A stretch of 64,000 nt of DNA, from the NCBI RefSeq assembly GCF_006345805.1, contig NC_043013.1, forward strand, positions 40,052,001-40,116,000, given 5' to 3'. Shown one piece after another: positions 4,948 to 57,760 of this stretch; position 1 is the stretch's first letter, and every line of letters starts with the position of its first letter. The position numbers and the translations under genes are program-made. Origin of the DNA: Octopus sinensis. Its lineage: Eukaryota. The notes below the pieces were generated by a model, which was given only the letters and a program-made list of their open reading frames with translations, was not told where the DNA came from and did no database searches.

Positions 4948-4974
4948 AAGCCTATTATTATTATTATCATCATC

Positions 4975-5022
<48 letters not shown>

Positions 5023-5059
5023 GCTGTTGTTGTTGTTGTTGTTGTTGTTGTTAAAGTAG

Positions 5060-6950
5060 TGAAATCAGCGAGTGTTAGCACGCCAAGCAAAATGCATAGC
5101 GGCATTTCGTCTGTCTTTACTGTCTGAGTTCAAATTCCGTCAAGGTCGACTTCACCTTTCATCGATTCGGGATCGACAAAATAAGTACCAGTTAACCTCT
5201 GGGGTCGATGTAATGGACCTCCCCATCCATCAGATTTACTGCCAAAATAGGAAAGGGTTATCATTACCGCAGCGAGCTGGCAGAATCGTTAGCGCGTCGG
5301 ACACAATGCCTCACAGTATTTCTTCCTACGTTCAGAGTTCAAATCCTACCGAACTCAACTTTGCCTTTCATTCTATGGGGATCGATAAAATAAAGTACCA
5401 GTCGAGCACTGGGGTCGATGTAGCCAACTGCGTCCTTCCTCTGGAATTGCTGGACTTGTGCCAAAAATGAAAATAATTGTTATTGTTTAATCAAAGTCAA
5501 TACTGATCATGATCAAGATGGTCAATAATTAAAGACCTTCTAACCGTGACAATCCTTTCCGAAAATCGAACGGCTGCATGGAAGCTTTCCTTGACATAAG
5601 GTAACATATTTGAAGACAAGAAATCAATCAATTAAATCATCAATCCCAGTACATAACTGGTGCTTTATTTTTATCAAGCACGGTGCGAAGAAGTAAAGGC
5701 AAAGTTGACCTCGGCGGGATTTGAAACTAACCAACACTACAAGGCATGAACTCTGTCACCCTAACTCTTTAATAATTCTGTCTGATTTTGATACAAGGTC
5801 AGTAATTTTGAAGGGAGGGGCTAAATTGATTACATCGACCCTAATACGTGATTGGTACTTTATGTTTTCGGTCCCGAAAGGACGAAAGACAAAGATGACC
5901 TCGGCGGAATTTGAGATAAGGGCGTAATGAGTCGAAAGAAATACCCCTAGGTATTTTGCCTATCCCTCTGGTCTAACGGCTCTGCCAGCACACCGCTTTT
6001 AACTCTTTGATAATACGACCTGCTAGATGTAACAACTAAATCCAGCTCAAAACACACCCAACCATTTAATGAATTAGATCCGATAAAGCAATCCGGCATA
6101 CTTCTGAAAGGATAGGATGGTCACGCAATTGAAACGTCTTTGATCAGGGTTCAGCTTTGTCAAGCTTACGGAGTAAGGGTGGCGTACAGCGCCTTGTTTC
6201 ACATATCAAACCTCAGCCTCTTGGACTTTAGCGTACCTCCATCCTAATACCCATTTCTATTACCGCTTTACAGAAACTAGAGGTGTGTGTGTGCTTCCTA
6301 TTAATATCAATAATTGTTTATTTTCGACTAGAAAATCCGGAACTCAACCATGAAATATAATTGTTCCGTAGGGGCCATATGGTGATCCAGTAATAAAATC
6401 CCGTTCGAAATTTAATATGTATTAAGAAAACAAAAACCAAAATATAAAGCAGCCATATTGTTCCTCTGTATTGTTCGGTTGAATAAACTGGAGTAAAGTT
6501 TTGTTTGGTGATCGACGTCCGTTCTATTATCGATCCAATATCAAAATATTGGCAGTTGAAAACACTGGAATAAAACAAAATCTCAAATAAATTAACAGCA
6601 CTAACAACAATAGCAATAATAAAAATGAGGAGGAGGAGGAGGAGGGCTATCATCATCATCAACATCATCATTATCATCACAATCATGCTGATGACATTAA
6701 GTTTCTAATAATATTTATTCTCTAATAATATTTATTATTATTACCATTATTAAGGGGGCAAGAGGGCAGAATCGTTAGCACGCCGGACAAAAATGCATCA
6801 CTCTATTTCTTCCGGCCCTTTAGGTTCTGAGTTCAAATTCCTCCGAGGACAACATTACCTTTCATTCTTACGGGGTCAATAAAGCAATTACCTGTTGAGT
6901 GTTGGGGTAAATGTGATCGATTAGTCCCTCTCCCTAAATTTCAGAAAGGA
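5060..6950. mobile_element. Cluster of family A SINEs: about 5060-5250 (+), 5270-5480 (+), 5580-6000 (-), 6755-6950 (+)
   Basis: Recurrent gcagaatcgttagcacg / gagttcaaat / gtcgac...cctttcatc / ggggtcgat motifs; boundaries approximate. Confidence 0.8.
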
Positions 6951-7057
6951 TTATTATTATTATTATTATTGTTGTTGTTGTTGTTGTTGTTGTTGCTGCT
7001 GTTATTATTATTATTATTAATTATTATTATTATATTATTATTATTATTATTATTATT

Positions 7058-7596
7058 GAGTGAGAGAGCAGTGCATGCCATCAAAGTGACACTGAGGTAA
7101 AATATACGAAGCCCAGTATACCCACCATGACTACCCGTCTGATAAGGGTACACCAGGCACGTGCATCACAACCATATGTGCGCGACATGGTGATCTCATA
7201 TCAAGATAAACAGCACATGACCTTGCAGGTGGGGCCCAGTTAGAATTTTCTTCTGGTCGAGTAACCCATCCGGCTCAAAAGGTTCCTGAATAAGGGTTGT
7301 TTAAGGATGGTGAACGAAACACCCATGTTTCCAGAAGTGAATTATTCAAATAACAAAGAGTCCCTCTCAACACATGGCTATGATGCTCCCCCACTACTTC
7401 TGCTTGTGATCAGAGATGTACATATTATCAGCCACTAAGGGACAGGCTCAACTGGTTAAGATCAAACAAGTGACAAGCTAATCTGTGGTATTGAGCAGAA
7501 TATTTGCTGTGGCCCATCTTTTATACCAAGACAAAACAATGTACATAACACTTTCAATCAGTTAAGATCAGAAGCCACGTGAGCCACTGCCTGGTA

Positions 7597-7597
<1 letters not shown>
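7058..7597 (-). mobile_element. Near full-length ~540-bp (AAT)n-flanked non-coding element
   Basis: Flanked by (ATT)n on both sides; colinear with 8150-8629 and with the reverse complement of 54380-54916. Confidence 0.9.
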
Positions 7598-7633
<36 letters not shown>

Positions 7634-7659
7634 TTATTATTATTATTATTATTATTATT

Positions 7660-7755
7660 GAGTGAGAGAGCAGTTCATGCCATCAAAGTGACACTGGGGT
7701 AAAATATACGAAGCCCAATATACCCATCATGACTACCCGTCCGATAAGGGTACAC
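7660..7755 (-). mobile_element. Truncated ~540-bp element copy
   Basis: Same fixed end next to (ATT)n, truncated at the other end. Confidence 0.85.
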
Positions 7756-8047
7756 ACACATACACACACAAAGAATCTTTCCACCAATTGTGTTTGATTA
7801 TGCTGTCAATTGAATCCCTCGGTTCATTACAATTCCTCTTAGGAAGCTAAATAAAAATGAATACAATATATCTCACTTCACTGTCTTTCTGTCTTGACTG
7901 CAGCATACAGTAGAATATAAGAATGAATGTTTGAAATTTTATGGCTTAGGAGAAATCTGTATATTGGCGACAACAGGTCAACCACCGATATGTTAGCCAC
8001 CAACGGAAGGTAGTTGCTCAACAATTCCTGATTTTTATTATTATTAA

Positions 8048-8095
<48 letters not shown>

Positions 8096-8149
8096 TACTA
8101 TTATTATTATTATTATTATTTTTTAATTATTATTATTATTATTATTATT

Positions 8150-8628
8150 GAGCGAGCGAGCAGAGCATGCCATCAAAGTGACACTGGGGTAAAATATACG
8201 AAGCCCAGTATACCCATCATGACTACCCGTCTGATAAGGGTACACCAGGCACATGCATCACAACCATATGTGCGCGACATGGTGATCTCATATCAAGATA
8301 AACAGCACATGACCTTGCAGGTGGAGCCCAGTTAGAATTTTCTTCAGATCGAGTAACCCATCCCGCTCAAAAGGTCCCTGAATAAGGGTTGTTTAAGGAC
8401 GTTGAACGAAACACCCATGTTTCCAGAGGTGAATTATTCAAACCCAAAGAATCCTTCTCAACACATGGCTATGATGCTCCCCCACTACTTCTGCTCGTGA
8501 TCAGAGATGCACATATCGTCAGCCACTAAGGGACATGCTCAACTGGTTAAGGTCAAACAACTGACAAGCAAATCTGTGGTATTGAGCAGAATATTTGCTG
8601 TAGCCCATCTTTTTACCAAGACAAACAA

Positions 8629-8629
<1 letters not shown>
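8150..8629 (-). mobile_element. Truncated ~540-bp element copy
   Basis: Colinear with 7058-7597; (ATT)n on both sides. Confidence 0.9.
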
Positions 8630-8672
<43 letters not shown>

Positions 8673-8674
8673 TA

Positions 8675-8721
<47 letters not shown>

Positions 8722-8722
8722 G

Positions 8723-8787
<65 letters not shown>

Positions 8788-8790
8788 TTT

Positions 8791-9520
8791 CAGTAGTTTT
8801 ATTTTTATAGCGTGCTTTCACTTCACTACCGAGCGCAGCTCTGTGTGCCTTGGGTATGTGCTGTGATTTGTTGTGATGCTCTGATGGTTATTGTATGGAA
8901 AGTGTTCTGCGTAGGATGTGTGCAGTGCCTAGTAGTGCAATTTTCTGTATGTTATATGTGTTTGTAAGTCCTGGTGTTTTTGTTATGTATTTGTCTGAAT
9001 ATTTTTTTATCATGCCTAATGCACCTACTATGATAGGAATCAGTTCTTTGATTATTTTATTTTTTATATTATCATAATCATTAGGCTCCCCTTCGTTGTT
9101 TACATCGTGTTTGTTGGGAATGTTGCGTTTGTCTTCGTGTTTTACAGTTTCAGTGTTTATATTATTGGGCATTGTTGTGTGGCTTCTATCTACATTTTCC
9201 TGGTGTATTTTTTCTTTTAATGTTCTATTTCTATTTCTGATATTTTTTTGGCTTTGAGAATGTATCTTCGTACGTTAGCTAATTTATTAGGGTTCATTGC
9301 TGTATCCGAGTCTATATCTCTATTATTTTCCTTCCATATTTTATATGTATGTGTTGTATTTTCATTTTTTGGGTAGAGCATTGCTGTGAAGTATGCGTGT
9401 AAGATAGAAATGTATTCCTCACGTGTCCATTTACGTCTTTTGGGTTTTATTTGCGGGACATGAGGTACAACGTCCGGCCCATTATTTTGACGGTCGTCAT
9501 TTTCGTAGGGTACCGGTCCG
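8791..9520 (-). mobile_element. Internally deleted R4/Dong-like non-LTR retrotransposon (family A)
   Basis: Minus strand reads KRRKWTREEYISILHAY (N-terminal-like region), then joins in frame to the C-terminus IPIIVGALGMIKKY...LLGTAHILRRTLSIQ*. The 3'UTR is nearly identical to that at 25941. (AAT)n at both ends. Confidence 0.8.
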
Positions 9521-10494
9521 TATTATTATTATTTTTACTATTCTTCCACTGGGATCGGCTTTGCCTTTCATCCTTTCAGGGTTGATAAAATACGTACCAT
9601 TTGAACACTGGGGCAAATTTAGTCGATTTACCCACTCCTCTGAAATCGCTGGCCTTGTACCGAAATTTGAAACCACTATTATTGTTATATTATTATTATT
9701 ATTATTATTATTACTATATTATCGGTGAGCTGGAAGAATCGTTAGCCCTTCGAACAAAATACTTCGCAGCATTTTTTCCGGCTCTTTATGTCCTAAGTTC
9801 AAATCCTGGCTTGGTCAGTCTTGTAGGTCATCATTTCGAGGTTGATAGAATGAGTACCAGTTGAACTTCGAAGTCGATATAATCGACTTACCAGAAAAAC
9901 TGCATGAAAATCAGGAATTGTTGAGCAACTACCTTCCGTTGGTGGCTAACATATCGGTGGTTGACCTGTTGTCGCCAATATACAGATTTCTCCTAAGCCA
10001 TAAAATTTCAAACATTTATTCTTATATTCTACTGTATGCTGCAGTCAAGACAGAAAGACAGTGAAGTGAGATGTATTGTATTCATTTTTATTTGGCTTCC
10101 TAAGAGGAATTGTAATGAACCGAGGGATTCAATTGACAGCGTAATCAAACACAATTAGTGGAAAGATTCTTTGTGTGTGTATGTGTGTGTACTTGTGTGT
10201 GTGTGTGTGTGTGATGTGTGTTTGTGTGTGTGCGTGTGTGTTTAAAAGACGGCAGTTATATTACAAGCTTGCGAGCGCATCTATGTATATATGTACGTAT
10301 GTATGTATGTATGTATGTATGCATGCATGCATGCATGTATGTATGTATGTATGTATGTATGTATGTATGTATGTATGTATGTATGTATGTATGCATGTAT
10401 GTATGTATGTATGTATGTACAGTTCTATATTTAAGAGATGAGGAATTATGTACATTATTTATATTTGACGAATATTTCTCCTAATCTTGTTTGT

Positions 10495-10545
10495 TGTTAA
10501 CACGTTTCGGCTGATATACCCTCCAGCCTTCATCGGGTGTCTTGG
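10495..10545 (-). ncRNA. Degenerate hammerhead ribozyme in a Penelope-like terminal repeat
   Basis: gacac-CCGATGA-a-ggctg/cagcc stem II-GAAA-cgtg. The core has a U4>C change and stem I pairs imperfectly. Confidence 0.5.
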
Positions 10546-10858
10546 GGAAATTTCGAACCTGTGTTCTCATTCCTAAGGTATTTTTCGATGTTATTATTAT
10601 TATTATCATTATTATTATTATTATTATCATCATCATCATTATTATTATTATTATTATTCAGGTCACTGCCTGGAATCGAACTCGGAATCTTGGACTTAGT
10701 AGCCCGCGCTCTTAACCACTACGCCATATGTATGTGGCAAGTTCAAAACTATTCTCGTCTGTATGTATGTGTATGTGAGTGTGTGTGTGTGTTCAAATGC
10801 ATTGTGTATGCCTTGTACTTTATGATACAGTCCTCTCTTTACATTTAAATTAGCTAAA

Positions 10859-11850
10859 ATGTGTGACGTTTCTTATTTCTAAACAGGGAGGACTTTCGGA
10901 TCCCGGATGACTCGAGCTTCAGCTACTAAAGCTGTTGAATATTTCGAGAGTTACAGTCTCTAAATTCATGCTGGCATTCTAAAGTCAAGGTAAAACCAGT
11001 TCTGGCAAGCATAATTCTTGATGGAACCCAGAGATCATAGAGTGGATCCACATAATAAAACTTACTGTGTCTAAAAACCATGAAACTACAGCAACAAAAG
11101 TGAGAAAAGAGCTATACCACTACGTTACCAATCCCGTGTGAACTAAAACGTTAATCGTGTGCTTCATAAAGCTGGATACAATGAGGGTGTTGCAATGTCT
11201 AAATTTCTGTCCCTCATCAACATTGATAAGGGAAGGAAAATGGTGTCTAAAATAACGGATGTGAGCAATGGCTTAACTGAACAATTATCTTTAATGAATC
11301 AACATTTATTCTTTTTCAGCTTCAAGGATAACCTATGTCTGGACACAGCCCAATGAAGTCTTCAACTCAGCCGGTTTGACCTCTACAGTAAAGCATGGAG
11401 GTAATCTGTGATAATTTAAGCAACCGTATCACGGAATTCTCTTCAGTTGCTCTATATGGCAGACTTAACATCAAGGATTATCTGAGTATTTTAGCTGATC
11501 ATGTCCATCCTACCGTATAAACATTCTTCTCAGATAATCGCGAAATCTTTCAGGTTCATAATGTGCTGATTCACACGGCTGATGCTGTTCAAAAGTGATA
11601 CGTGGAGCACAAACGTCATGTAGACACTAACATCCACAATCACCGGATCTCAATATAATCGAACATTTATGGTGCATTTTGGAACAGCAATTGAGGAGCT
11701 GCTTCACCCTGCCATTGTTCCTGAAAGAGCCAAAGCAGGTTTTACAAGGGAAATGGATCAAAATTCCCCTAAGAACAGTTCAGAATCTGTACAAATAAAT
11801 TATTCGATGTATTAAAGCTGCGATAAGTGCCACCAACTTCGTATCAAATT
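10859..11850 (+). pseudogene. Decayed Tc1-family transposase
   Basis: Across stops and frameshifts: LHKAGY, TVKHGG, YLSILADHVHP, IFQ.HN..IHTA, PQSPDLNIIEHLWCILEQQLR. TIRs not located. Confidence 0.88.
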
Positions 11851-11921
11851 ATACAACTTCCATCTAACAAGGTATTTCCATAACTTTATCACCTGGTGAA
11901 TATGTGTCTGTGTATATATTA

Positions 11922-12139
11922 CGAGGGGGCGATGAAAAGTTCCTGGCTTTGGGTAAAAGAAAATACAGGAGGATCAGTTAATTATGATTTTATTCAACAT
12001 ATCTCCACCTCAGATTCACACACTTACTGCAGTGGCCCTTCAATTTTTTCTAAGCCCTGTAAAAGAACTCGGAAAGTTGGTTCTCTAACCAGGCTTTTCG
12101 CGACACCCTTAAAGCCAGGAAATTTTCAGCAACCCTTCG
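11922..12139. mobile_element. Mariner-type MITE
   Basis: ~29-bp imperfect TIRs (cgagggggcgatgaaaagttcctggcttt / aaagccaggaaattttcagcaacccttcg) with TA on both sides. Confidence 0.88.
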
Positions 12140-12220
<81 letters not shown>

Positions 12221-12689
12221 CGCACATACGCGCACACCTACGCATACACGCACACACACCTATGTATGACGACAGCGTAACTCCACTGCAGTTGAGGATG
12301 GAAATAACAAAAAGGAACATTATGTCACAGGAGATAAAAGTATTGGCGATGAATGCAACAACAACTAACGCAGCAGCAGCGGTAGCAGCGGAAGCAGCGA
12401 CCATTAAATGACCAGTCTAGAAACGCAGATTATCAGATTAAGTATGTCGGTGAAAGAATTTAATGATGTGATTACAAACGACGTCAGTGAATGACGTTAC
12501 TGGCTGACACCGAGGATCTGCCGTACCGACGAATGAATCTGAATCTCTAGTTACTTGACCTCCTAATAATAGCGACCAAATTTCCCTCAAATCAAGCACT
12601 TAAAACCTATAGGAAGGACGAATCTGAAAAATACAGGTGATAGAATAAATCAGTAGTCAAATGACCCCATCCACTCAAAATTTACTAGT

Positions 12690-13000
12690 CTTGGCTAGTG
12701 GTTAGAGCGTTGGGCTCACAATTATGTGATAGTGAGTTCGATTCCCAGACCGGGCTGTGTGTTGTGTTCTTAAGCAAGACACTTTATTCCACGTTGCTCC
12801 TGTTCACTCAGCTGTAAGAATGAGTTGCGACGTCACTGGTGGCCTTTCTCTTTGGACAGCATTGGTGGCGTGGAGAGGAGAGGAGAGGAGAGGCGACTGC
12901 TGGACTTCTATGAACAACCTTACCTGGACTTGTGCCTCGGAGAGTGACTTTCTAGATGCAATCTCATGATCATTCATGACCAAAAGAGGACTTTAGTGTG
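12690..13000 (+). mobile_element. tRNA-derived SINE, CORE-like family E. Other copies: 38841-39175, 40252-40410 (truncated), 43559-43885
   Basis: A-box-like ...agtggttagagc and B-box gagttcgattccc, shared body ctgtagaaatgagttgcga.gtcactgg and tail gacttgtgcctcggag...catgacc. Confidence 0.85.
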
Positions 13001-13205
13001 CCTAAATTAGAAATCATTCGTTAGCGCGACAAGCAAAATGCGTATCGGTATTTCTTCCGGCTTTACGTTCTAAGTTCAAATCCTGTCGAGTTCGACTTTG
13101 CTTTTCACTCTTGTGGAGTCGATAAAACAATTAGCTATTGAGCATTTGGGATCAATATGATTGACTAGCCCATGAATTCCAGGCCTTGCGCCTAATGTAG
13201 AAACA

Positions 13206-13289
<84 letters not shown>

Positions 13290-13530
13290 GAGTGAGAGAG
13301 CAGTGCATGCCATCAAAGTGACACTGGGGTAAAATATACGAAGCCCAGTATACCCATCATGACTACCCGTCTCAAAAGGGTACACCAAGCACGTGCATCA
13401 CAACCATATGTACGCGACACGGTGATCTTATATCAAGATAAACAGCACATGGCCTTGCAAGTGGGACCCAGTTAGAATTTTCTTCAGGTTGAGTAGCCCA
13501 TCCTGCTCAAAAGATCCATTATTATTATTA

Positions 13531-13582
<52 letters not shown>

Positions 13583-25940: not shown

Positions 25941-28654
25941 GCAGTAGTCTTTTTTATCACGTGCTTTCCCTGCACTACCGAGCGCAGCTCTGTGTGCCTT
26001 GGGTATGTGCTGTGGTTTGTTGTGATGCTCTTATTTTTACTGTATTGAAAGTGCTTTACATAAGATGTATGCAGTGCCCAGCAGTGCTATTTTGTGTATG
26101 TTATATATACTTGTTAGTCCTGGTGTTTTTGTTATATATTTGTCTGAATATTTTTTATCATACCTAATGCGCCTACTGTGATAGGAAATAATTCTGATTT
26201 TTAGACTCTACATTCTAGGTCTTTGTATTCAGAAAGTTTCTCCATTTCTTTTCTAGAAACATTGTCATCTGTTGGTATTGATACATCGATTAGAAATCAT
26301 TTTTTTTTCTTGGTGATCTCTGACGACTATATCCAGCCTATTGGCCTTAATTTCTCTGTGCATTGGCATATCTCAAAGTATGGTTGCTTTCTCATTTTCT
26401 GTGACCTTTTCTGGCGTGTGGCTATAACATCTTTTTTCTGTTGTTATTCCATAATGTTGGCATAGTTTCCAGTGTATGTAAGTCCCAATTCTGTCGTGTC
26501 TGTGAGTATATTCCTTCTTAGCCTGGACTGGGCAGCTAGAAACAATATGATTTATTGTTTCTTCTCATCTCCACATATTCTGCAGTTACTTGTATTTCTT
26601 TTCATTACATGTTTTTGGTAATTTCTGGTGGGAAGGTTTTGATCTTGTGCTACAATTAAAATTCCTTCAGTCTCTGCTTTACGTCCTGAGCTTCTCAGCC
26701 ATTGTTGGGATTTTGCTTTGTCTAGTTCTTTTCTGTTTAGTTTAACCCAGTATTTGCCATGAAAGGGCTTTTCTTGCCATCGTTTTATCATGGTCTGTTG
26801 CTGTTCCAGTTTTAGTTTGGATTTCAGTTGTTTTACAGCTTTTGTTGTTTCTTCTTTTTCTTCATAGCTGTTAGGTACTATGACTTCTTTTTTGTATTTG
26901 CCAGCAATCTTAAAGACTGAAAACGCTTTTTTGTTTTGTACGCGTTTTGCGGCTATTTGTATTAGCTTTCCTTGCTTCTGGAGTAGGTATTTCTGTAGTC
27001 CTATGGTGATTATTTTGTAATGGTTTTCTAGTTGTATAAGGCCTCTACCACCTTCGATACGTTGTATATAAACCCTTCTATGTCGGATTTTGGGTGGTTC
27101 ATCCTAAATCCTGTCGTTATTTTCCCCGTTTTCCTGTCTATTTTGATTAGTTCAGTTAAGAATATTGAAGCTGTAGCTTATAACTGGGACGGCTAAAGTG
27201 TTGATGCCTATTATCTTGTTTTTCGCATTCGGTTCTGTTTTCAGTATTAATCTAACTCGTCTATAGTATTCTTTTTTTAGCTTCTCTTCATTTGTGTGTG
27301 TTTAATCGTATCCAGTTCATTGATTCCTAAATATTTGTATGTCTGGCATTGGTCTAATTCTCTTATTTCATTTCCTTTATCTAGTGTGATGTTGCTACTC
27401 TTAACTAGTTTTCCTCTTTTCAAGGTGCTTTGGCACATTTTTCTAAGCCAGATTTCATGTTTAATGTTTCCAACAGTTTATCATTTGTAGTGTACTGTTT
27501 TAGGTCATCCATATATAAGAGGTAGTTGATTGCTTTGCCGTAACAGTTGTATTCACATCCAGTTCTGTTTAGCATGTTAGATAAATGTGTCAGTTCCAAG
27601 CAGAAAAGGAGTGGAGAAAGCGTGTCTCCCTGGAATATTCCTCTTCTAATGGGGATGGCTTTGGTTTTTATGAGTCCCTTTTTTGTCTGGAGTTGTCGCA
27701 CTGTCTGCCATTTATTCATGGAATGTTTTATATCTCTATATATATAAAACTGAGAATGTGTGTCTGTCTGTGTTTCCCTAAAACTTGAGAACTACACAGC
27801 CAATTTCATTCAAATTTTACACATGCCTTACTTAAGGTCCGGGGAGTGTCATGGGCAAAACAAATGTTCAACCTCTTGCCTATGATAGAGCCCATAGCAA
27901 TATCATATCTTCTCCACTATTTCAATATTACGTGTTAAAAGTGAAACAAAAACATTTCTCTATTTTATGTCAGATACTTTCACTTTAATCTAGGATAACA
28001 CAACCAACCGAAATAAAAAATAAAATTAAAGACTATTGTCTATAAAGTATACAATGTAGAGGAAAAAATTATTTGAACACCTAGAGGAAAGCACTGTTGA
28101 AAAGTGTCTTGGTGCGACTATGAAAGATATCAAGTATCTAACCAGAGGCGGTAAATTCGCCACAATAGAAGCAAGGTTCGAGTCAACGGAGCGTACAAGG
28201 GAGTACTCGACTCGATAATTTTATAATTATTGGTGCTACCTTGTTCATAGCTAGTGTTTCTAGGATTCATGTGTGGGGAATACTATCAAAAGCCTTTCGG
28301 TAATCGATCCAGACAATACTTAGACCCTTCTTCTTTCTGTGGCTGTCTTCAGTTATGGTTTTATTGATCAGTAGTTGGTCTTTATAGCCGTATGAGATAT
28401 GCAGCATCCCTTCTGCTCTTCTGGAAACAGGTTTTCTTCCGGATGTTTGCTTATTCTCTGCGATATTATTGCAGTAAAGGCTTCGTAAATTATAGGGAGA
28501 TAGGTTATGTAGGCCTGTAATTTTGTGGGTTTGCCGTTTCAGTGGATTTGGGAATTAGGATAGTTTCCCTTCCATGAGCCATTCAGACATTGTCTCTCGC
28601 TCTGCTAGTATTTCATTAAATTTCTCAACCAGATTTTTATGTGTTCCTGTTAGA

Positions 28655-30547: not shown

Positions 30548-31611
30548 TCAGGCCATTAAGAATGAAATGTCCGATTTTGAACTGATAGCTTCTCTGACTT
30601 TATCTCAACAAAAATCAATACAGTTGATCAAAGTATGCGCCTAAATTATCAGCGCAATTTTGCCATTTTATTGGTAGCTTGTATACGCCGGCACCGAAGA
30701 ATTCTGGAAAGCAAGAGGTGATAAAATCACAAAAGGCTGTTTTGGCATCTTCTTCATATTTGAAGATATTTTTTTCCTTGCAAAATGTTGTCTAATGGTT
30801 GGAAAACGTGATAGCCAGTTGGTGTAAGGTATGGCGAATATGGTGGATGACAGAGTGCTTCCAAGTTCCAACTTGAGTAGCGTTCTTTGTGCAACATGTA
30901 GTCGAGCATTGTCTTGCAAGAGAATTGGCCTTTCTCTATCGACCAATCTCAGTTGTTTAACTGCAAGTTCACTCATCATTTCATCCAATTGGTTGATATA
31001 TATATCCGCTGTAATTGACTTACCAGGTCTCATGAAGCTGTTGTGGATGATACCAGCGCTAGACCACCAAACAGACACCATTAGCTTTTTTTGGTGATTA
31101 TTATTTTTGGGATTGTGTTTTGGCACCTTGTCTCTATCCAATCACCGTACAGAATGCTTGCTATTGTTGAAAAGAATCCATTTTTCATCACACATAACAA
31201 TACGATTCAAAAATGGATCGCTTTTATGCCGTGACAGCAAAGGACAGTAAGTTTCAAGACAACGTGTCATTTGATGCTCATTCAGTTCGTGTGGTACCCA
31301 CTTATCCAGCTGCTTTACCTTGCCGATTTTTTCAATTGGTCCAATACAGTCGGAATCGAAACATCAAACCTTATTGTTAACTCACGCATAGTTTGACATG
31401 TATCTGCTTTTTATCTGACCATGGGTTCACAAAAATTGATTTACATGAGAAAACTCACAACATAACCAGACATCATTAATTGCATTTCGAAAAGTGATGA
31501 TGTACTTTTTCAATGTTGTGAAACAAAGAATTGTCAAGATAGAACATTAGAGTTAAGGACTTGCAAACTGGATGCATAAGAAAATCGGACATTTCATTCT
31601 TAATGACCTGA
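30548..31611 (-). mobile_element. Mariner transposon with decayed, N-terminally deleted DD34D transposase (Hsmar1/cecropia-like sequence)
   Basis: ~30-bp TIRs tcagg(c/t)cattaagaatgaaatgtccgatttt with TA on the right and CA on the left; motifs WVPHEL, IVMCDEKW, LLQDNAR and HPPYSP. Confidence 0.92.
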
Positions 31612-39862: not shown

Positions 39863-40549
39863 CGCATTTTTTCAAAATGTTGTTGCCGAAATGTAAATGT
39901 ATTTCAGAGATTAGAGTGTTCTCGGCGCCAAGAAAACGATGTCTGTGGTGTGTATGTGTGTGTGTGTATCAAATTTTATAAGGAAAAGGTTGAGAGTGAT
40001 TTCGAAGTTTCGGCCAGCCTGCCATCATCTGACAATTTCATGACAGTAGTCAAGTCGAGACTTTGAATTCACAGCCTACTTTTCCTTTGAAAAAATTAAT
40101 GTAACAGCACTCTACGAATAAGTATTGGGTAATCCCCCATATATGTATATACATGTGTGTGTATGCATGTATGTATGCTTGTATTAATGTGTGTGTGTGT
40201 GTATATCATGTATGTATGTGTGTGTGTGTAGAGGGAGAGAGAGAGAGTGAATGCACATGCTTCAATGATTAGAGCGCTGGGCTTACAATCGTAAGGTTAT
40301 GAGTTCGATTCTCAGACCGGGCTGTGTGGTATTCTTCAGCAGGACACTTTATTTCATGTTGCTCCAGTTTACACGGCTGTAGAAGTGAGTTACGAAGTCA
40401 CTGGTGCTTCTGTAGTTCATACAAGGTAAGCCTATTTCTGTTATATTCGTTGCATTCACTGAGTGTATTTCAATAGAGAGAAATTTGTGTTTTGGAGCGA
40501 TAGCTCTATTTACAGCAAGTGGTATCTTGATACCCTACTAAATTTGTTT

Positions 40550-40574
40550 ATATATATATATGTATGTATGTATG

Positions 40575-40620
<46 letters not shown>

Positions 40621-40829
40621 GTGTGTGTGTGTATGTGTATATATATATATATGTGTATGTGTATATTATATATATATATGTGTATGTGTATATATGTATA
40701 TTTATATGTGTGTATATAATGTATATATATGTGTGTATATATTATGTATATATATATGTATGATAATAGTGTATATATATGTGTGTATATATATATGTAT
40801 ATATATATGTATGTATATATGTGTATATA

Positions 40830-40860
<31 letters not shown>

Positions 40861-40881
40861 GTATGTATATATGTGTATATA

Positions 40882-40912
<31 letters not shown>

Positions 40913-41672
40913 GTATGTATATATGTGTATATAATATGTGTATATATATATATATATATATGTATGTATATATATATATAATATGTATGTATTATATAGT
41001 AATATATATGTATGTATATATATATTATATATATATATATTGTGTGTGTGTGTGTGTATGTGTATATATATATATATGTGTATGTGTATATATATATATA
41101 TATGTGTATGTGTATATATGTATATTTATATGTGTGTATATAAATGTATATATATGTGTGTATATATATATGTATATATATCGATATATGTGTATATATA
41201 TATGTGTGTATATATATATGTATATATATATATATATGTGTATATATATATGTGTGTATATATATATGTATATATATCGATATATGTGTATATATATATG
41301 TGTGTATATATATATGTATATATATGTATGTATATATGTGTATATAATATGTGTATATATATATATATATATATGTATGTATATATATATATAATATGTA
41401 TGTATTATATAGTAATATATATGTATGTATATATATATTATATATATATATATTGTGTGTGTGTGTGTGTATGTGTATATATATATATATGTGTATGTGT
41501 ATATAATAATATATATGTGTATGTGTATATATGTATATTTATATGTGTGTATATAAATGTATATATATGTGTGTATATATAATATGTATATATATATGTA
41601 TGTATATATGTGTATATATATATGTGTGTATATATATATGTATATATATATGTATGTATATATGTGTATATA

Positions 41673-41703
<31 letters not shown>

Positions 41704-41903
41704 GATGTATAATTGTGTATATATATATGTGTGTATATATATATATATAATATGTATGTATATATGTGTATATATATATGTGTGTATATATATAATATAT
41801 ATATATGTATGTATTATATATATATATATATGTGTAGTATATATATCTATATATATGTATGTATATATATTATAATATATATGTATGTGTGTGTGTGTGT
41901 GTG

Positions 41904-41945
<42 letters not shown>
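40550..41945. repeat. 1.4-kb (TA)/(TG) compound microsatellite with an internal ~410-bp block duplication
   Basis: aatatgtatgtattatatagtaatatatatg recurs at about 40980 and 41392. Confidence 0.9.
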
Positions 41946-44492
41946 TTGAAAATCAAGAAGAGATTGGAAATTTATTCTCATCCAAAACTTTTTTATTAAA
42001 ATGTTTTCTACAGCATATATAATAATAAAAACCAACATATATTTCTACTGCCGCAACTGCACATTGTTCCGTATGCAATTATGCATCCTAGTCGCTGCAA
42101 TTTCATCAAGGACCCGTCATTTACGACGTTTTCAAAGTGAACCAATTCAAACAGGTTTCCGGCGTTGGTATTCAGTTGAAGGTTTATAACACTACTTTTT
42201 AAATCGAATTGAATTCTGGTCTTATAGGGAGATAGAGAGAAAAGTTGGGGAAGATCTCACAAAGCGCATAGTCCATGTTAATGAAAACAGTGCTGACTGT
42301 GTTATGTAAATAAATGATGTATTTTATTCATACATTTGGAGAATATTATATAAAATTCATTATCCAAAGAGTGACACAGGCAGAAATTAACAACCGAGGT
42401 ATAAGATGATGAATCACATGTAATTATTTTAATACGTGTCTCAGTTGTTGATTTATGTTTAACCACATATACTTAAATATGTATGTATGGTGGAGGGTGT
42501 CAGGAACAGGCTGTCTGTGTAGGTAAGATATGCAATGTCTAACCAGAATGAAATCATGGATATTAATTATTAAATATACAAATATTAAGTGATTTTGAAC
42601 CCAAAATAAAACTAATTTAATGCATAGAATTTAGTGTCTAATTCAGTAAATGGTTAACATTTTGGTGTTAGACACGCACAGTTTCAACTGCTTTTTAAAT
42701 TTTAATGTAAATACACCTAATTTTATTATAAATACACGTAATGCGAAAATCTATTAATCCCATTGCTTGTGATTCCATCTAGAGAAGACATAAAATGCTG
42801 TCTGATGGAAGCAGAATGAAAACTACTTACGTTCAGTAACAGCGTGAGGATTGTTATATTGCGTTCATGTGTTACAGTATGTGTGTGTATGTGTGTGTTG
42901 GTTTTTAATGAATACTGAGTTAATTTTAAAAGACACGTTATTCTCCGAAAGTAAAGCGGCGAGCTGATAGAATCGTTAGCACGCTGGGTAAAATGCTTAA
43001 CGGCATTTCGGCCTTCTTTACGTTCCAAGTTCAAATTCTGCCTGGGTCGACTTTGCTTTTCATTCCCTTCCGGATCAATAAAATATGTACCACTTGAACC
43101 CTGGGGTCAATGTAAACTACTTAGCCCCTCCCCCCCAATAAAAATGCTGTCCTTGAGCCAAAATTTGAAACCAATTTTTAGGAGACATGTAAATAAATGG
43201 TAAGCAAAGCAGCGAGCTGGCTTAAGCGCTAGGGCACGGGTTTTTTTTCGTTCTGAGTTCAAATTCCACGGAGTCCACCCTTGCTTTTATCCTTTCGAAT
43301 AGTTGAGTCGATGGCATTGAACAACATTTTCATCTTAAAATCTGCTGGCCTTGTGCCTAAATTTGAAATCATTATTCTGTGCATAAAATAATAATAATCA
43401 AATAAATATATGTGCATGTAAATACACGTGTATGAAAAATATAAATATATGTGAAATAAATCGTTTTTAAATATACGTATACACAATGTTGTATGTGTGT
43501 GTGTGTGTGAAGATTGTATTTTTTATTTATATGTATATTGTCTCTACGTGTGTGCTATGAAGGCACATGTCTCAGTGGTTAGAGCGTAGAGTTTACGATC
43601 GTGAGGTTGTGAGTTCGATTCCCGGACCGGGCTGTGTATTTTGTTCTTGGGCAAGACACTTTATTTCTCGTTGCTCCAGTTCACTCAGCTGTAGAATTGA
43701 GTTGCGATATCACCGGTGCCAAGCTGTATTGGCCTTTGCCTTTCCCTTGGTGTGGAGAGGGGTTAGGCTGGTATGCATGGGCGACTGCTAGCCTTCCACA
43801 AACAATCATGCCCTGACTTGTGCCTCGGAGGGTAACTTTCTTGCTGCAGTCACATGGTCATTCATGACCGAAGGGGGTCTCCTCTTGTATGTGTGTGTAA
43901 GTAGTGTTTACGTTTGTTTACATACGTATGTAGATACAACCTGACTTTGCTTTAATTCCTCCGCTTCAAATACGTTCTATAACTAAGTGAATCAAGCAAC
44001 AAAAAATTCGACTAGTTATAATATCTCCGAAATTAGGGGAAAGAGGGCTAGTCAATTTCATCGGCCCCAGTGTTCAACTGATATATATTTCATCGATCCC
44101 AAAAGGATGATAGCTAAGGTCGACCTCGCCTTAATCTGAAATCAGAACGTAAAGGCGAACGAAATCTGCAAAACATTTTGACTGGCGTGCTAACGATTCT
44201 TCCCAGTTCGTCGCTTTATCGATTAGTAATCAAGAAAGCAACAGTACATCGTCATGGAACTGAACTGGGAGCTATTAGATTGTAGTCAAACAATGTTTAT
44301 CTCTCTTAAAAGTCAAATTACCCATCTCACCTTTAGTAAGGTTATTTATCCTTTCACAATGAGGGTCACGGAAAAAATTTCTGTCTGACGTTAGATAACA
44401 AACAGTCACATGTAATCAGTTTTTCTTTGCCTACCAAAATTTGTGTCTTTGCTCATCTGAACCTGCCGTCAACTATAAAATAGCTCTTTCTC

Positions 44493-54973: not shown

Positions 54974-56451
54974 TAAGAATGGCAAGAACAACGGTAACAA
55001 TAACTCTGTGAGTAAGCACTATAATGGAAGCAACAAGAAACAACAACAACAATAGCAATGGCAATAACAGCAGGAACAACTACAACAACGATAACAGCAA
55101 TAACAACAGCAACAACAAGAAATCAACAAGCAAATGAAGATTATTCTTAATGATTGCTTTAAGAAAAAAAAATCAGAGGTTTAAGGCAAATACTAATAAT
55201 CAATAAGTTGGCATCTTCCCCCATCCTTCACACTTCTCTGCCTCATTCTCCTCCTGCCCTCTCTCTCTCCCTCCTTCTTCCTATCTCCCTCTCCCTCCCT
55301 CTCCTCCCTTCTCTTTCTCTCACTCTGTCTTCCTCTCCCTTCCACTCTCTCTCCCTCTCCCTCCCTCTCTCTCCTTCTCTTTCTCTCACTCTCTCTTCCT
55401 CTCCCTTCCACTCTCCCTCTCCCTCCCTTTCCCTCCCTCTCGCTCCTTCTCTTTCTCTCATTCTCTCTTCCTCTCCCTTCCACTCTCTCTCCCTCTCTCT
55501 CCCAATCCTCTTGCTTTCAGCGCGCCTAAAACTTCTTCATTATACGACTACAATTCTTTCACATTCTCCTCCCTCTCTCTTTCTCTCACTTTCTCTCCTT
55601 CTCTTTCCCTCTCTCTCTCTCTCTTTCTCTGTTCACTTTCTTTATCACTTTCTCTCCCTCTCTTTCTCTCTTTCTGTCTCTCATTCTCTCTCTTCGCTTT
55701 CTTGTGCACTATCTCTTTCTCACTTACCCTGTCTCTCTTCCCACTTCTCTCTCTCTCTCTCTCCCTCCCTTTTTGTCCGTCTCCCTCCTTCTTCACCACA
55801 CCCTATACCGTACCCCTCAGGCATCCACCCACCCACCTTCACACACACAATATTGTCCTCATACATTACACACCTTACTGACAAACAAATAACTCAACAC
55901 GTCAATAATTATTTAATCAGCTTCAAAATGTCTGCAAAGAAAGAAAGAAAGAAAAGGAGAGAGAGTGGGAGAATGTGAGGGAGGGGGTAGTAGATTTATT
56001 GCTTTTATTACTGTCTGGAAGGTATAAACAATCTTTTAGTGAGTGAAGAAAAAAATGATGTAGTGATGATGATGATGAGGAGGAGAAGGAGGAGGAGGAG
56101 GAGGAGGAGGAAGATGAGGATGATGATGGTGGTGGTGGTGGTAGTGGTGATGTTGGTGATGGTGGCGGTGGTATATAAGTGTATGTATATATATATATAT
56201 ATATATATAAATAAGGATAAGGTCATATATATAATTAGAAATATTGAATTTCTAAATGTCTCAAAGAGACATGAGCGGTGGTGGAGCGCGATAGAGTGGT
56301 TGTATACTGTCAACATAACGTGACAGTCCCGTAAGGGAATTACACCACCGCTGTTTAGCCCTTGGAAGCATCGACGCTTCCTGTCGGACTTGACACATTT
56401 CCTGTGTCCTTATATTTGCGAAGGGGAGGCAAGCACCCCCACCAGATAGGA

Positions 56452-56512
56452 TTCACACCTGAGAACATGCATGTTTCTGGGTCTTTACCCGTCATCAGCC
56501 CAGGATTGTGAA
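56452..56512 (-). ncRNA. Type I hammerhead ribozyme
   Basis: ttcaca-at-cctggg-CTGATGA-c-gggt(aaag)accc-a-GAAA-catgcatg-TT-ctcagg-tgtgaa. 12-bp stem I with a 2-nt bulge, palindromic stem III, GUU triplet; predicted cut between 56464 and 56463; C/A mismatch at the base of stem II. Confidence 0.75.
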
Positions 56513-56543
56513 CCTGCTAGTTAAAATCTTTATTATAGTTTTT

Positions 56544-57455
56544 TTAGTTTTTTTTCTTTTTTTTGGTCTTTGGGTGGTGATTCCACCCGTGTTCGCTTTC
56601 TATCCTCTTTTTTTCTGTTCTTTCCTTTTCTTTCTCCTTCACTAACTCGTCGCCACTTTCCACATTATCTGTTGTCACGATTTCCTCTTCCGCTTGCAAT
56701 TCCACATTCTCCTTTTCTAACTCCTCTGTCAAAGCCTCCATTCCTTCCTTCAGTGTTATCGTCTTCTCTTGTATTTCTCTTTGAGGACACACATCCTTCA
56801 TGTGCCCTCTGCTCTTACATTTATAACACACTGGAGGTCTCCCCTCCACCACGACACTCAGTCGTGTCTCGTCGGTGAACACCAACTCCTCCGGGATGTT
56901 ATACAAATCTGGCATGGTTATGTGGACTGAAGCTTGCACCGCATAACCCCACCAGTTTATTTCTTTCGACTTCTCCACCCTAAGAATGTCCACGCTCTCT
57001 TTGCAGTTGTAGATTATTGCAGCTACTATTCTTTCGGTATCAAGTTCCGGTGGGATCTTGCTTATTCGTATCCTCACTGCTCTTTTTTCACAATAACTAG
57101 GAAGTAGAACCCATTTTTCCGATCTCAACACTGTCATTGCGCTCTTCTTCGCTTCATCTTCATTTTCAAAACGAACGTCTACCGTAGCGTATTTTCTACC
57201 TCTATTGTAGAAGGTAATTGTTCATTTTATTTCCTGTAGACATTTCTTAATCTCTTCCACCTCTGCTACTTCTATTCTCTTTGAGACCACATTCCATGTT
57301 CTGTATGTTATGATTTTTTTCTCCGCTTCTTTCACTTCGTCTTCAGGTAGTGTAACTCTCAGACAGTCTCCTTCCTTCTTGAAGCTGTCGTAGTATTTCC
57401 TCAAATTTTCCTTCTAGACAATTATTTCTACCAACTGTAATTCGTTCGCAGCCAG
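56544..57455 (-). pseudogene. LINE ORF1/gag-like RNA-binding protein with CCHC zinc knuckle and an acidic, possibly coiled-coil, tail; two premature stops
   Basis: One reading frame of about 300 codons with TAG at 57416 and TGA at 57224. CYKCKSRGHMKDVC (CX2CX4HX4C, 56787-56828) is preceded by VVVEGRPP. RRM-like segments are inferred. Confidence 0.8.
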
Positions 57456-57724
57456 GATGTGTGTCCTCAAAAAGAAATACAAGAGAAGACGATAACACTG
57501 GAGGAAGGAATGGAGGCTTTGACAGAGGAGTTAAAAAAGGAGAATGTGGAATTGCAAGCGGAAGAGGAAATATCAGGTGTGAATCCTAGCTGGTGGGGAT
57601 GCTTGCCTCCCCTTCGCAAATATAAGGACACAGGAAATGTGTCAAGTCCGATAGGAAGCGTCGATGCTTCCAAGGGCTAAACAGCAGTGGTGTAATTCCC
57701 TTACGGGACTGTCACGTTATGTTG

Positions 57725-57760
<36 letters not shown>

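What the first reader, a model, noticed from the sequence alone, without database searches (positions are those of the whole stretch)
56311..57724. Candidate new mobile system: a hammerhead ribozyme and inverted termini around a lone gag/ORF1-like zinc-knuckle gene
Seen: a ~300-codon minus-strand frame with a CCHC knuckle and no RT or endonuclease. About 30 nt after its stop is a type I HHR with palindromic stem III, then a structured 152-nt tail (hairpins ggaagc/gcttcc and tccc/ggga) that is repeated inverted at the other end; no TSD is visible. Established: HHR-bearing terminal repeats, inverted 5' partial copies and palindromic stem III are hallmarks of Penelope-like elements (PLEs) and retrozymes, whereas RRM plus CCHC ORF1 proteins belong to LINEs. 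Inference: a non-autonomous PLE-type element that carries its own LINE-like RNA chaperone and borrows RT in trans, a combination I do not recognise.
Basis: partly seen in the sequence, partly recalled or inferred. Interest (0 to 1): 0.92.

Follow-up and report, generated by a model that had tools for sequence, protein, structure and literature searches.

The report
Dead LINE ORF1 fragment fused to hammerhead
In an octopus genome, a broken copy of a LINE retrotransposon's first gene sits next to a hammerhead ribozyme motif and an inverted partial copy; it is a real but single, decayed insertion, not a demonstrated new mobile system, though one breakpoint lies at the ribozyme's predicted cut site.

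Summary
The minus-strand frame is a pseudogene: it has no start codon and two in-frame stops. The inverted terminus has two parts, 155 nt of tail plus 118 nt of ORF. It lacks 217 nt, and that gap ends within 1 nt of the predicted hammerhead scissile bond. The hammerhead motif is far beyond chance (1 hit in the window; 3 hits in 3000 shuffles). It has a C·A mismatch at the base of helix II, and no Rfam hammerhead model matches it. The tail is not significantly structured.

The ORF belongs to a large octopod family of LINE ORF1 proteins (RRM-like fold plus CCHC knuckle). In Octopus vulgaris, O. sinensis and Argonauta hians, relatives are followed directly by an ordinary endonuclease/reverse-transcriptase ORF2. 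ORF1-only relatives also exist. I found no second copy of the hammerhead and tail, in about 220 kb of octopod DNA or in any collection I could search.

My best reading is a one-off chimeric, head-to-head retrotransposition product beside a (TA)n tract, with a footprint of ribozyme self-cleavage. Whether a PLE or a LINE reverse transcriptase made it is unresolved. Interest is moderate.

The parts
57728..57759 (.). (TA)16 microsatellite directly abutting the outer end of the inverted copy. It is either the target site or a simple-repeat 3' tail.
   Evidence: The window holds 25 (TA)>=10 tracts in 64 kb, so direct abutment is unlikely by chance (rough estimate about 0.002).
57573..57727 (+). Inverted copy of the 155-nt tail. 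It is sense on the + strand.
   Evidence: repeat I1, 97%; 5 mismatches against the forward tail.
57572..57572 (+). Junction nucleotide A. It sits where C1.1, the first base 3' of the predicted scissile bond, would be. It is either a non-templated base or a substitution.
57454..57571 (+). Inverted copy of an ORF1 segment, equivalent to forward 56797-56680.
   Evidence: repeat I2, 118 nt, 97%.
56544..57453 (-). Forward ORF1 pseudogene. It is 5'-truncated at about codon 7-14 relative to the Octopus bimaculoides relative P0001. In-frame stops lie at 57416-57414 and 57224-57222. It ends in a Lys-rich run and lacks the C-terminal part seen in relatives.
56787..56828 (-). CCHC zinc knuckle, CYKCKSRGHMKDVC.
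56523..56538 (-). CTATAATAAAGATTTT. This is the same AATAAAG-containing motif that closes the 3' UTR of ORF1-only relatives (L001 CTGTAATAAAGATTT; L005 CTATAATAAAGA).
   Evidence: Against L001, 4 of 300 shuffles score as well.
56449..56514 (-). Type I hammerhead motif. Helix I is 56514-56499 paired with 56463-56449. The CUGAUGA core is 56498-56492. Helix II and its loop are 56491-56478. GAAA plus helix III is 56477-56465. U17 is 56464. The predicted cut lies between 56464 and 56463.
   Evidence: Against: (no Rfam match).
56308..56462 (-). 155-nt tail, from U1.2 of the hammerhead to the common 3' end of both copies. It contains the hairpins GGAAGC/GCTTCC (56381-56364) and TCCC/GGGA (56338-56327).
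56214..56307 (-). 94-nt stretch between the tail end and the (TA)n tract. Its core (56279-56241) matches the reverse complement of the first 45 nt or so of the O. vulgaris ORF1-only element L005. It is probably family-derived sequence rather than random flank.
   Evidence: score 20 against a null of 8.3 +/- 1.6; 0 of 2000 shuffles reach it; no other copies.
56171..56213 (.). (TA)n tract on the 3' side.

Best explanation
The window is octopus DNA. The locus is an old, dead product of one complex retrotransposition event next to a (TA)n tract. It is not a working element.

The forward (minus-strand) part is a 5'-truncated cDNA of an RNA with two components. The first is an ORF1 sequence from an octopod LINE family (RRM-like domains plus a CCHC knuckle). 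The second is a segment of about 215 nt (56308-56522) that carries a canonical type I hammerhead and a 155-nt tail.

The inverted part was made from the opposite DNA end on a second RNA molecule with the same 3' end. That molecule had already cut itself at the hammerhead. The reverse transcriptase ran to the new 5' end (U17/C1.1), added or miscopied one base, and jumped into the ORF1 region of the other template for 118 nt. The two cDNAs were then joined head to head.

Shown: the anatomy, the family of the ORF, the non-random hammerhead motif, and the position of the breakpoint.

Inferred: self-cleavage in vivo, the template jumps, and the double-ended priming.

Not resolved: (1) whether ORF1 and the hammerhead segment were already joined in a source element or were joined by a template jump in this event; (2) whether the enzyme was the LINE's own ORF2 protein or a PLE reverse transcriptase.
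For: 1. Host. Dispersed repeats in the window are 80-92% identical to repeats in O. bimaculoides, O. sinensis and O. vulgaris loci.
2. ORF family. The closest protein is an O. bimaculoides CCHC protein at 53% identity. A profile search found 594 cluster representatives at E<=1e-3. All named members come from octopods.
3. LINE identity. Relatives are followed directly by an ORF2 with Exo_endo_phos, RVT_1 and zf-RVT in L004, L002 and L007.
4. Pseudogene state.
5. Both copies end at the same base, 56308. The inverted copy is a shorter 3' part of the same sequence.
6. The missing stretch in the inverted copy is 56463-56679. My descriptor places U17 at 56464 and C1.1 at 56463, so the breakpoint is within 1 nt of the predicted scissile bond. 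The junction carries one odd base. A random breakpoint would land that close about 3 times in 1100.
7. The hammerhead motif occurs at about 0.001 per shuffled window. The minimum-free-energy fold reproduces helices I and II.
8. None of eight distinct genomic loci holding relatives carries the hammerhead or tail, and their 3' UTRs show no similarity to it.
9. This LINE family forms head-to-tail arrays without poly(A) between units (L004, three 5.28-kb units; L001). That fits end-to-end template jumping.
Against: - No Rfam hammerhead model matches. The C·A mismatch at 10.1/11.1 would weaken catalysis, so activity is not shown. The mismatch may be a later CpG-type mutation, but that is only inference.
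- The breakpoint argument rests on one junction and was formulated after the fact.
- The 94 nt beyond the tail look family-derived. That fits better with the hammerhead and tail lying inside a family element than with a terminal, foreign RNA.
- I could not search the source genome, so 'one-off' is an absence of evidence from about 285 kb of octopod DNA.
[quoted passage not shown] That leans towards a PLE enzyme.
Confidence: 0.45

Rival explanations
1. ORF1, hammerhead and tail form a genuine multi-copy, non-autonomous element family with defined ends. It carries its own LINE-type ORF1 protein and is mobilised in trans by a Penelope-like element (PLE) RT/GIY-YIG enzyme that recognises the tail. 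This locus would be one aged copy.
For: - Both the inverted and the forward copy contain ORF sequence joined to the tail.
- The head-to-head inverted 5'-truncated copy, the adjacency to (TA)n, a possible one-sided 'extension' and a hammerhead near the 3' end are listed as PLE insertion features in PMC8557442.
- ORF1-only relatives exist as discrete units. L005 is a complete 2.1-kb element with an intact 379-aa ORF between two (TA)n tracts. L001 is a head-to-tail pair.
- The window's 94-nt terminal stretch is homologous to L005's terminus.
- A PLE with a CCHC ORF and a 3' hammerhead is on record: Chlamys-2_cBra (PMC8557442).
- A dispersed repeat with a minimal PLE-type hammerhead-like core occurs in the same genome.
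Against: - I found no second copy of the hammerhead and tail anywhere.
- None of the ORF1-only relatives has them.
- The hammerhead is not the minimal PLE type (PMC4209133).
- No PLE RT or GIY-YIG domain was seen, although my scan was partial.
- The ORF here lacks the family's C-terminal domain and is broken.
- Related full LINEs supply an obvious non-PLE enzyme.
Confidence: 0.2
2. The hammerhead and tail are the natural 3' UTR end of one octopus LINE subfamily. This copy would be an internally deleted derivative of HAL1 type, keeping ORF1 and the 3' end and moved by the parent LINE's ORF2 protein.
For: - The ORF family is LINE ORF1.
- ORF1-only derivatives keep the LINE-type 3' UTR motif GTCCCCT...AATAAAG.
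- The window keeps CTATAATAAAGATTTT just before the hammerhead.
- Family-like sequence lies on both sides of the hammerhead and tail.
- The stretch after AATAAAGA aligns weakly with L005 (TTGATAAGGGGAAAATACACTGAAAC against CTGATGACGGGTAAAGACCCAGAAAC). The alignment gives p of about 0.05 (92 of 2000 shuffles).
Against: - Three full LINEs and four ORF1-only relatives show no hammerhead by my descriptor and no similarity to the tail.
- A self-cleaving ribozyme just upstream of the 3' end would cut the coding RNA away from the part where reverse transcription starts.
- The L005 resemblance is of borderline significance and does not fold as a hammerhead.
Confidence: 0.15
3. Unrelated pieces. A hammerhead-bearing repeat (a retrozyme-like or PLE fragment) and a LINE ORF1 fragment landed next to each other by separate insertions. 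A later DNA-level inverted duplication and deletion made the repeat arms. The hammerhead motif has no function here, and the breakpoint coincidence is chance.
For: - The region is rich in repeats and microsatellites.
- The locus is old: the arms differ by 8 of 273 bases and the ORF has stop codons.
- Rfam does not recognise the hammerhead.
Against: - The two copies share the same terminal base.
- The inverted copy's internal breakpoint falls within 1 nt of the predicted scissile bond and carries one extra base, which is typical of RT template jumps.
- There is no microhomology at the deletion edges.
- The element's end abuts (TA)n exactly.
Confidence: 0.12

Closest known systems
Type I LINE ORF1 proteins (RRM plus CCHC) of L1/Tx1-type non-LTR retrotransposons, in the Khazina & Weichenrieder classification as summarised in PMC5203782
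   Same: Ferredoxin/RRM-like domains are followed by a single CX2CX4HX4C knuckle. In relatives the gene lies directly upstream of an ORF2 with APE, RT and zf-RVT domains.
   Different: Here the gene is a broken fragment with no ORF2. The clade of the octopod LINE was not determined by phylogeny.
HAL1 ('half-L1') ORF1-only derivatives of LINE-1 in mammals (recalled from my own knowledge, not checked here)
   Same: These are LINE derivatives that keep ORF1 and lack ORF2. The octopod loci L001, L003 and L005 look like this.
   Different: HAL1 keeps the L1 3' end and poly(A). This locus ends in a hammerhead and a 155-nt tail without poly(A), and has an inverted partial copy.
Metazoan non-LTR retrozymes (PMC7229834)
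   Same: Canonical type I hammerhead with a 6-bp helix I, a 4-bp helix II and a short helix III with a palindromic loop. GC content is low. A weak base of helix II has a precedent in the axolotl HHR_Amex2 U·U mismatch. The mobilising enzyme is unknown ('LINEs or PLEs').
   Different: Retrozymes are non-coding tandem repeats of 170-400 nt, each with its own hammerhead. Here there is one hammerhead, no tandem repeat, and a coding remnant attached.
Penelope-like element insertions (PMC8557442, PMC4209133), including Chlamys-2_cBra with a CCHC ORF and a 3' hammerhead
   Same: An inverted 5'-truncated copy abuts the 5' end. There is a bias for (TA)n, a possible one-sided extension, and a hammerhead near the 3' end.
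   Different: There is no PLE RT or GIY-YIG domain and no direct pseudo-LTR. The hammerhead is not the minimal PLE variant (helix II of 7-8 bp, helix I of 4-5 bp). The ORF is homologous to a LINE ORF1, not to a PLE protein.
Chimeric retrocopies made by RT template switching (for example U6-L1 chimeras) and HDV-like ribozymes at LINE 5' ends (R2, RTE, L1Tc); both recalled from my own knowledge
   Same: A cDNA continues on a second RNA after reaching the 5' end of the first. A self-cleaving ribozyme defines an RNA end that shows up in genomic copies.
   Different: The ribozyme fold is different (hammerhead) and so is its position (3' side). There is only one locus.

Membership tests
Hammerhead ribozyme, type I | Conserved core CUGANGA ... 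GAAA with an A15.1-U16.1 pair and H17 at the cut site | tested here: met
   CUGAUGA at 56498-56492. GAAA at 56477-56474. A15.1 is 56474 and U16.1 is 56465. U17 is 56464.
Hammerhead ribozyme, type I | Three helices in type I topology: helix I open, helices II and III closed | tested here: met
   Helix I has 6 bp plus a 6-bp extension. Helix II has 4 bp with a 4-nt loop. Helix III is palindromic. The minimum-free-energy fold gives helices I and II. Shuffles give 3 hits in 3000. Caveat: C10.1·A11.1 is a mismatch.
Hammerhead ribozyme, type I | Match to the curated Rfam covariance models for hammerheads | tested here: not met
   No hammerhead family was listed at gathering score or at E<=10, on 64 kb, 1.5 kb or 95 nt.
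Hammerhead ribozyme, type I | Self-cleavage | not testable with these tools
   The only evidence is indirect: the inverted copy's breakpoint lies within 1 nt of the predicted scissile bond.
LINE ORF1 protein, Type I (RRM plus CCHC) | CCHC zinc knuckle | tested here: met
   CX2CX4HX4C at 56828-56787. Pfam zf-CCHC gives 19 bits against a cut-off of 20.8. The family profile hits retroviral nucleocapsid knuckles.
LINE ORF1 protein, Type I (RRM plus CCHC) | RRM fold | tested here: inconclusive
   The AlphaFold2 model has pLDDT 88.6 and a beta-alpha-beta pattern. The best PDB matches are RRMs (TAP, UPF3B, MEC-8, Prp24), but with E >= 4.8e-3 and TM-scores of 0.3-0.5. There is no Pfam RRM hit.
LINE ORF1 protein, Type I (RRM plus CCHC) | Encoded directly upstream of an APE/RT ORF2 in full-length elements | tested here: met
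   Met for relatives: L004 in O. vulgaris, L002 in O. sinensis and L007 in Argonauta hians. Not met at this locus or in L001, L003 and L005.
Penelope-like element, or an element mobilised by a PLE | PLE-type RT with GIY-YIG endonuclease, in the element or as a partner sharing its 3' end | not testable with these tools
   None was found in the locus, in the window ORFs I scanned or in the related loci. The source genome could not be searched.
Penelope-like element, or an element mobilised by a PLE | Minimal hammerhead variant in a pseudo-LTR (helix II 7-8 bp, helix I 4-5 bp, almost no helix III) | tested here: not met
   The motif has the canonical build: helix I 6 bp, helix II 4 bp (compared with PMC4209133). 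No direct terminal repeat was found.
Penelope-like element, or an element mobilised by a PLE | Inverted 5'-truncated copy abutting the 5' end, next to a (TA)n tract | tested here: met
   compared with PMC8557442.
Metazoan non-LTR retrozyme | Non-coding tandem repeats of 170-400 nt, each with a type I hammerhead | tested here: not met
   There is a single hammerhead and no tandem copy. The inverted copy lacks the hammerhead. A coding remnant is attached.
ORF1-only LINE derivative (HAL1-like) | ORF1 kept, ORF2 absent, 3' end shared with the parent LINE, many copies | tested here: inconclusive
   The first two points are met. Only a 12-15-nt AATAAAG motif is shared with relatives' 3' ends, and the tail has no match. 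Copy number could not be measured.

The most novel reading that the evidence does not exclude
ORF1, hammerhead and tail form a real, multi-copy octopus retroelement: a protein-coding relative of retrozymes that carries a LINE-type ORF1 chaperone. It would be processed by its own hammerhead and copied by a borrowed reverse transcriptase, with head-to-head insertions at (TA)n. A weaker form is also novel: the locus is a fossil chimera showing that one reverse transcriptase copied both a hammerhead RNA and a LINE RNA. That would point to the enzyme that moves animal retrozymes.
Probability: 0.2. Interest if true: 0.75.

Novelty: new variant of a known kind. Interest (0 to 1): 0.4.

Why it matters
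Which enzyme mobilises animal hammerhead-bearing repeats (retrozymes) is an open question. PMC7229834 leaves it as 'LINEs or PLEs'.

A genomic junction in which a cDNA stops at a hammerhead scissile bond and then continues on a LINE ORF1 RNA would be natural evidence for two things. First, that the ribozyme cuts in vivo. Second, that the same reverse-transcription complex handled both RNAs.

The related loci add a side result. Octopods hold a large LINE family with Type I ORF1, and it has discrete ORF1-only derivatives and head-to-tail arrays. The octopus LINE paper I read (PMC9115989) names only RTE and Dong elements.

As it stands this is one decayed locus, so the value lies in a lead that a single genome-wide BLAST can test.

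Tried and rejected
- Rfam found no hammerhead on the whole window, on the locus or on 95 nt.
- Searching for more copies of the tail or hammerhead found nothing. I tried BLASTN against the window and 14 fetched loci. I tried exact-pattern scans of metagenome, viral and prokaryote collections. I tried a protein search with the open frame that runs through the hammerhead and tail. I also tried an exact look-up of the window's 197-aa ORF.
- I tested whether the tail is the 3' or 5' UTR of relatives. No local alignment scored above shuffles, except the AATAAAGATTT motif against L001.
- I tested whether L005 holds a decayed hammerhead after its AATAAAGA. The result is borderline (92 of 2000 shuffles) and the sequence has no hammerhead helices, so I do not rely on it.
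- I tested whether L005 has short terminal inverted repeats. It does not, beyond chance.
- I tested whether the 94-nt stretch is a common (TA)n-flanking repeat. No other copies turned up.
- L1-type twin priming was rejected. That mechanism inverts an upstream part of the RNA, whereas here the inverted piece duplicates the 3' end.
- The 'structured tail' was rejected as a significant feature.
- The long family members (P0025, P0044) are gene-model fusions to WD40 and LDL-receptor genes, not domain architectures of the element.
Full report
**What is there**

I read the locus on the minus strand. From 5' to 3' it contains:
- a (TA)16 tract at 57759-57728;
- an inverted block at 57727-57454;
- a long frame running from 57453 to the TAA at 56546-56544;
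- an A-rich run, then CTATAATAAAGATTTT at 56538-56523;
- a hammerhead-like motif at 56514-56449;
- a tail running to 56308;
- 94 nt of other sequence, then a second (TA)n tract at 56213-56171.

The inverted block has two parts. Positions 57573-57727 pair with the tail 56308-56462 (155 nt, 97%). Positions 57454-57571 pair with ORF positions 56680-56797 (118 nt, 97%). The inverted copy is therefore 'ORF piece plus tail', with 56463-56679 missing and a single odd A at the junction (57572). The two copies differ at 8 of 273 positions, mostly by transitions.

**The frame**

The frame is not open. It has no start codon and two in-frame stops, TAG at 57416-57414 and TGA at 57224-57222. The longest intact ORF is 197 aa. 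Homology to the closest protein starts at about residue 15 of that protein, right at the junction with the inverted block. The forward copy is therefore 5'-truncated. It ends in a Lys-rich run just after a conserved 'EGW..V.KKK'-type motif. It lacks the C-terminal part that relatives have.

**The hammerhead**

By hand and by my own descriptor, the motif has these parts:
- CUGAUGA;
- a 4-bp helix II (GGGU/ACCC, loop AAAG);
- GAAA;
- a palindromic helix III (ACAUGCAUGU);
- U17;
- a 6-bp helix I (CCUGGG/CUCAGG), extended by UUCACA/UGUGAA beyond a 2-nt bulge.

The descriptor finds only this site on either strand of the window. It found none in 100 Markov shuffles and 3 in 3000 mononucleotide shuffles. 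The minimum-free-energy fold reproduces helices I and II (z = -2.1).

Two points count against it. The pair at the base of helix II is C·A. No Rfam hammerhead model matches at any threshold I could set.

The build is 6-bp helix I, 4-bp helix II and a short palindromic helix III. PMC4209133 calls this build the canonical metazoan type I hammerhead, and PMC7229834 assigns it to animal retrozymes. It is not the minimal PLE variant. PMC7229834 also describes a natural retrozyme hammerhead with a mismatch at the base of helix II.

As a whole it folds no better than shuffles.

**What the ORF is**

The window is octopus DNA. Its dispersed repeats are 80-92% identical to repeats in Octopus loci.

- The nearest protein is an O. 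bimaculoides 'CCHC-type domain-containing protein' at 53% identity.
- A profile search of 1.84 billion representatives gave 594 hits at E<=1e-3.
- Every named hit is from O. bimaculoides, O. sinensis, O. vulgaris or Argonauta hians.
- Pfam sees only the knuckle.
- An AlphaFold2 model of the core is confident (pLDDT 88.6). Its best PDB matches are RRM domains, but the scores are weak.

Genomic context settles the family. In O. vulgaris (L004) the relative P0008 is ORF1 of a 5.28-kb unit. Its ORF2 has Exo_endo_phos, RVT_1 and zf-RVT domains, and three units lie head to tail. In O. sinensis (L002) and Argonauta hians (L007), ORF1 is likewise followed within about 50 nt by a homologous ORF2.

This is therefore a LINE ORF1 of the RRM-plus-CCHC kind (Type I as summarised in PMC5203782). 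It is met only for relatives at 27-38% identity.

**ORF1-only relatives**

Other relatives have no ORF2 within 10 kb.
- L001 (O. bimaculoides) is the closest subfamily. It is a head-to-tail pair of ORF1 units with a 3' UTR ending in CTGTAATAAAGATTT.
- L003 also lacks ORF2.
- L005 (O. vulgaris) is a complete element of about 2.1 kb. It has an intact 379-aa ORF and a 3' UTR ending in CTATAATAAAGA..., and it lies between two (TA)n tracts.

ORF1-only derivatives of this LINE group are therefore real. The conserved 3' UTR motif GTCCCCT...AATAAAG is shared by full and ORF1-only forms. The window keeps the same AATAAAG motif directly before the hammerhead.

The 94 nt between the tail and the (TA)n tract also match family sequence. 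They align to the reverse complement of L005's first 45 nt or so, and 0 of 2000 shuffles score as well. I found no other copies of this stretch.

**The hammerhead and tail elsewhere**

I found them nowhere else. They are absent from the rest of the window and from 14 fetched loci (about 220 kb of octopod DNA). None of the eight distinct genomic loci holding ORF1 relatives has them, and the metagenome, viral and prokaryote collections gave nothing. A protein-space search with the open frame through them also found nothing. No tool here can search the source genome, so copy number remains unknown.

**How it most likely arose**

Both copies end at the same base (56308), and the inverted one is the shorter. 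This points to reverse transcription starting at the same RNA 3' end from both sides of a break. L1-type twin priming does not fit, because it inverts an upstream segment rather than duplicating the 3' end.

The most informative feature is the inverted copy's internal breakpoint. The retained tail starts at U1.2 (56462). The position of C1.1 reads A. Everything from U17 (56464) back to 56680 is missing. That is what a cDNA would look like if its template had already been cut by the hammerhead, so that its 5' end is C1.1. The polymerase would then add or miscopy one base and jump to another template. A random breakpoint would fall this close about 3 times in 1100.

The head-to-tail arrays in L004 and L001 have no poly(A) between units. 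This shows that end-to-end joining of units is common for this LINE group.

I therefore favour a single complex event with template jumps and a cleaved template (confidence about 0.45). I cannot say whether ORF1 and the hammerhead segment were already joined in a source element. I also cannot say which enzyme acted. The related LINE ORF2 is an obvious candidate. The head-to-head architecture next to (TA)n is described as PLE-typical in PMC8557442, and a repeat with a minimal PLE-type hammerhead-like core occurs in the same genome.

**Comparison and verdict**

The locus combines known things:
- a Type I LINE ORF1;
- an ORF1-only state resembling HAL1;
- a retrozyme-type hammerhead;
- a PLE-like head-to-head insertion.

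It fails the defining tests for a retrozyme (no tandem repeat, not non-coding) and for a PLE (no PLE enzyme, no pseudo-LTR, not the minimal hammerhead). As a hammerhead it meets the core and helix criteria but not the Rfam model test, and activity is untested.

The interpretation as a new mobile system is not established: this is one dead copy, the ORF's relatives belong to ordinary LINEs, and there is no evidence of a family with common ends. The cleavage-site breakpoint and the link between ORF1-only elements and (TA)n are worth one genome-wide check. I rate interest at 0.4. The probability that a real ORF1-plus-hammerhead family, or an informative RT chimera, lies behind the locus is about 0.2.

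Noticed in passing
window 15835-15790 (minus strand); L002 15381-15516 and 20193-20370: A dispersed octopus repeat carries a minimal hammerhead-like core: CCTGTTTCTGACGAAGAGCTCCGCTCGAAACGTTAAACC. It has CUGANGA, one unpaired A, a GAGC/GCUC helix, CGAAAC and a palindromic ACGU. This resembles the minimal PLE hammerheads of PMC4209133. In L002 one copy lies right after the LINE's (ATT)n tail.
   Followed up: partly
L004 (O. vulgaris OX597840.1) 4445-19168: Three or more full LINE units lie head to tail with a 5.28-kb period and 98-100% identity. Each has ORF1 plus ORF2 (APE/RT/zf-RVT). There is no poly(A) at the unit junctions, and each unit has an internal A28 run about 30 nt before the ORF1 ATG. 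The array's right end is lost in an assembly gap.
   Followed up: partly
L001 (O. bimaculoides CM046605.1) 9929-13952: Three ORF1-family copies lie in the same orientation. Two belong to one subfamily (head to tail, separated by assembly gaps) and one to another (42% identity). After the ORF1 stop, an in-frame stretch of about 77 codons stays open (ETEKKRAKIKGLVRLKLESGTFDDE...). L003 has a similar stretch downstream of its ORF1.
   Followed up: no
L005 (O. vulgaris OX597833.1) 9674-9820: A 51-nt inverted repeat (90% complementary, 45-nt spacer) lies inside the 5' region of the ORF1-only element, just after its terminal motif. Its nature is unknown.
   Followed up: no
L008-L013 (Logan contigs from runs SRR11869384-94): Near-identical contigs of about 1.7 kb hold only an ORF1-family gene (294 aa, P0009) plus flanks. 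This hints that ORF1-only units may be transcribed or abundant in some cephalopod data sets. I did not check the species.
   Followed up: no
window 16863-17405 (minus), 23195-24001 (minus), 28066-28212 (plus), 30668-31141 (minus): Other transposon remnants in the window: a LINE ORF2 fragment (31-36% identity to L004 ORF2), a weak zf-RVT fragment, a small ORF1-family fragment, and a mariner-type Transposase_1 fragment (E = 1e-20).
   Followed up: partly
window 40400-42000 and 20332-20431: About 1.5 kb of TA/TG microsatellite accounts for the GC dip to 0.22 and the GC skew of 0.56. Separately, there is a 100-N assembly gap. The window holds 25 (TA)>=10 tracts in all.
   Followed up: yes
window 56065-56170: A GGT/GAT/GAG trinucleotide microsatellite block lies directly beyond the 3'-side (TA)n tract. 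It produces long spurious ORFs on both strands.
   Followed up: no
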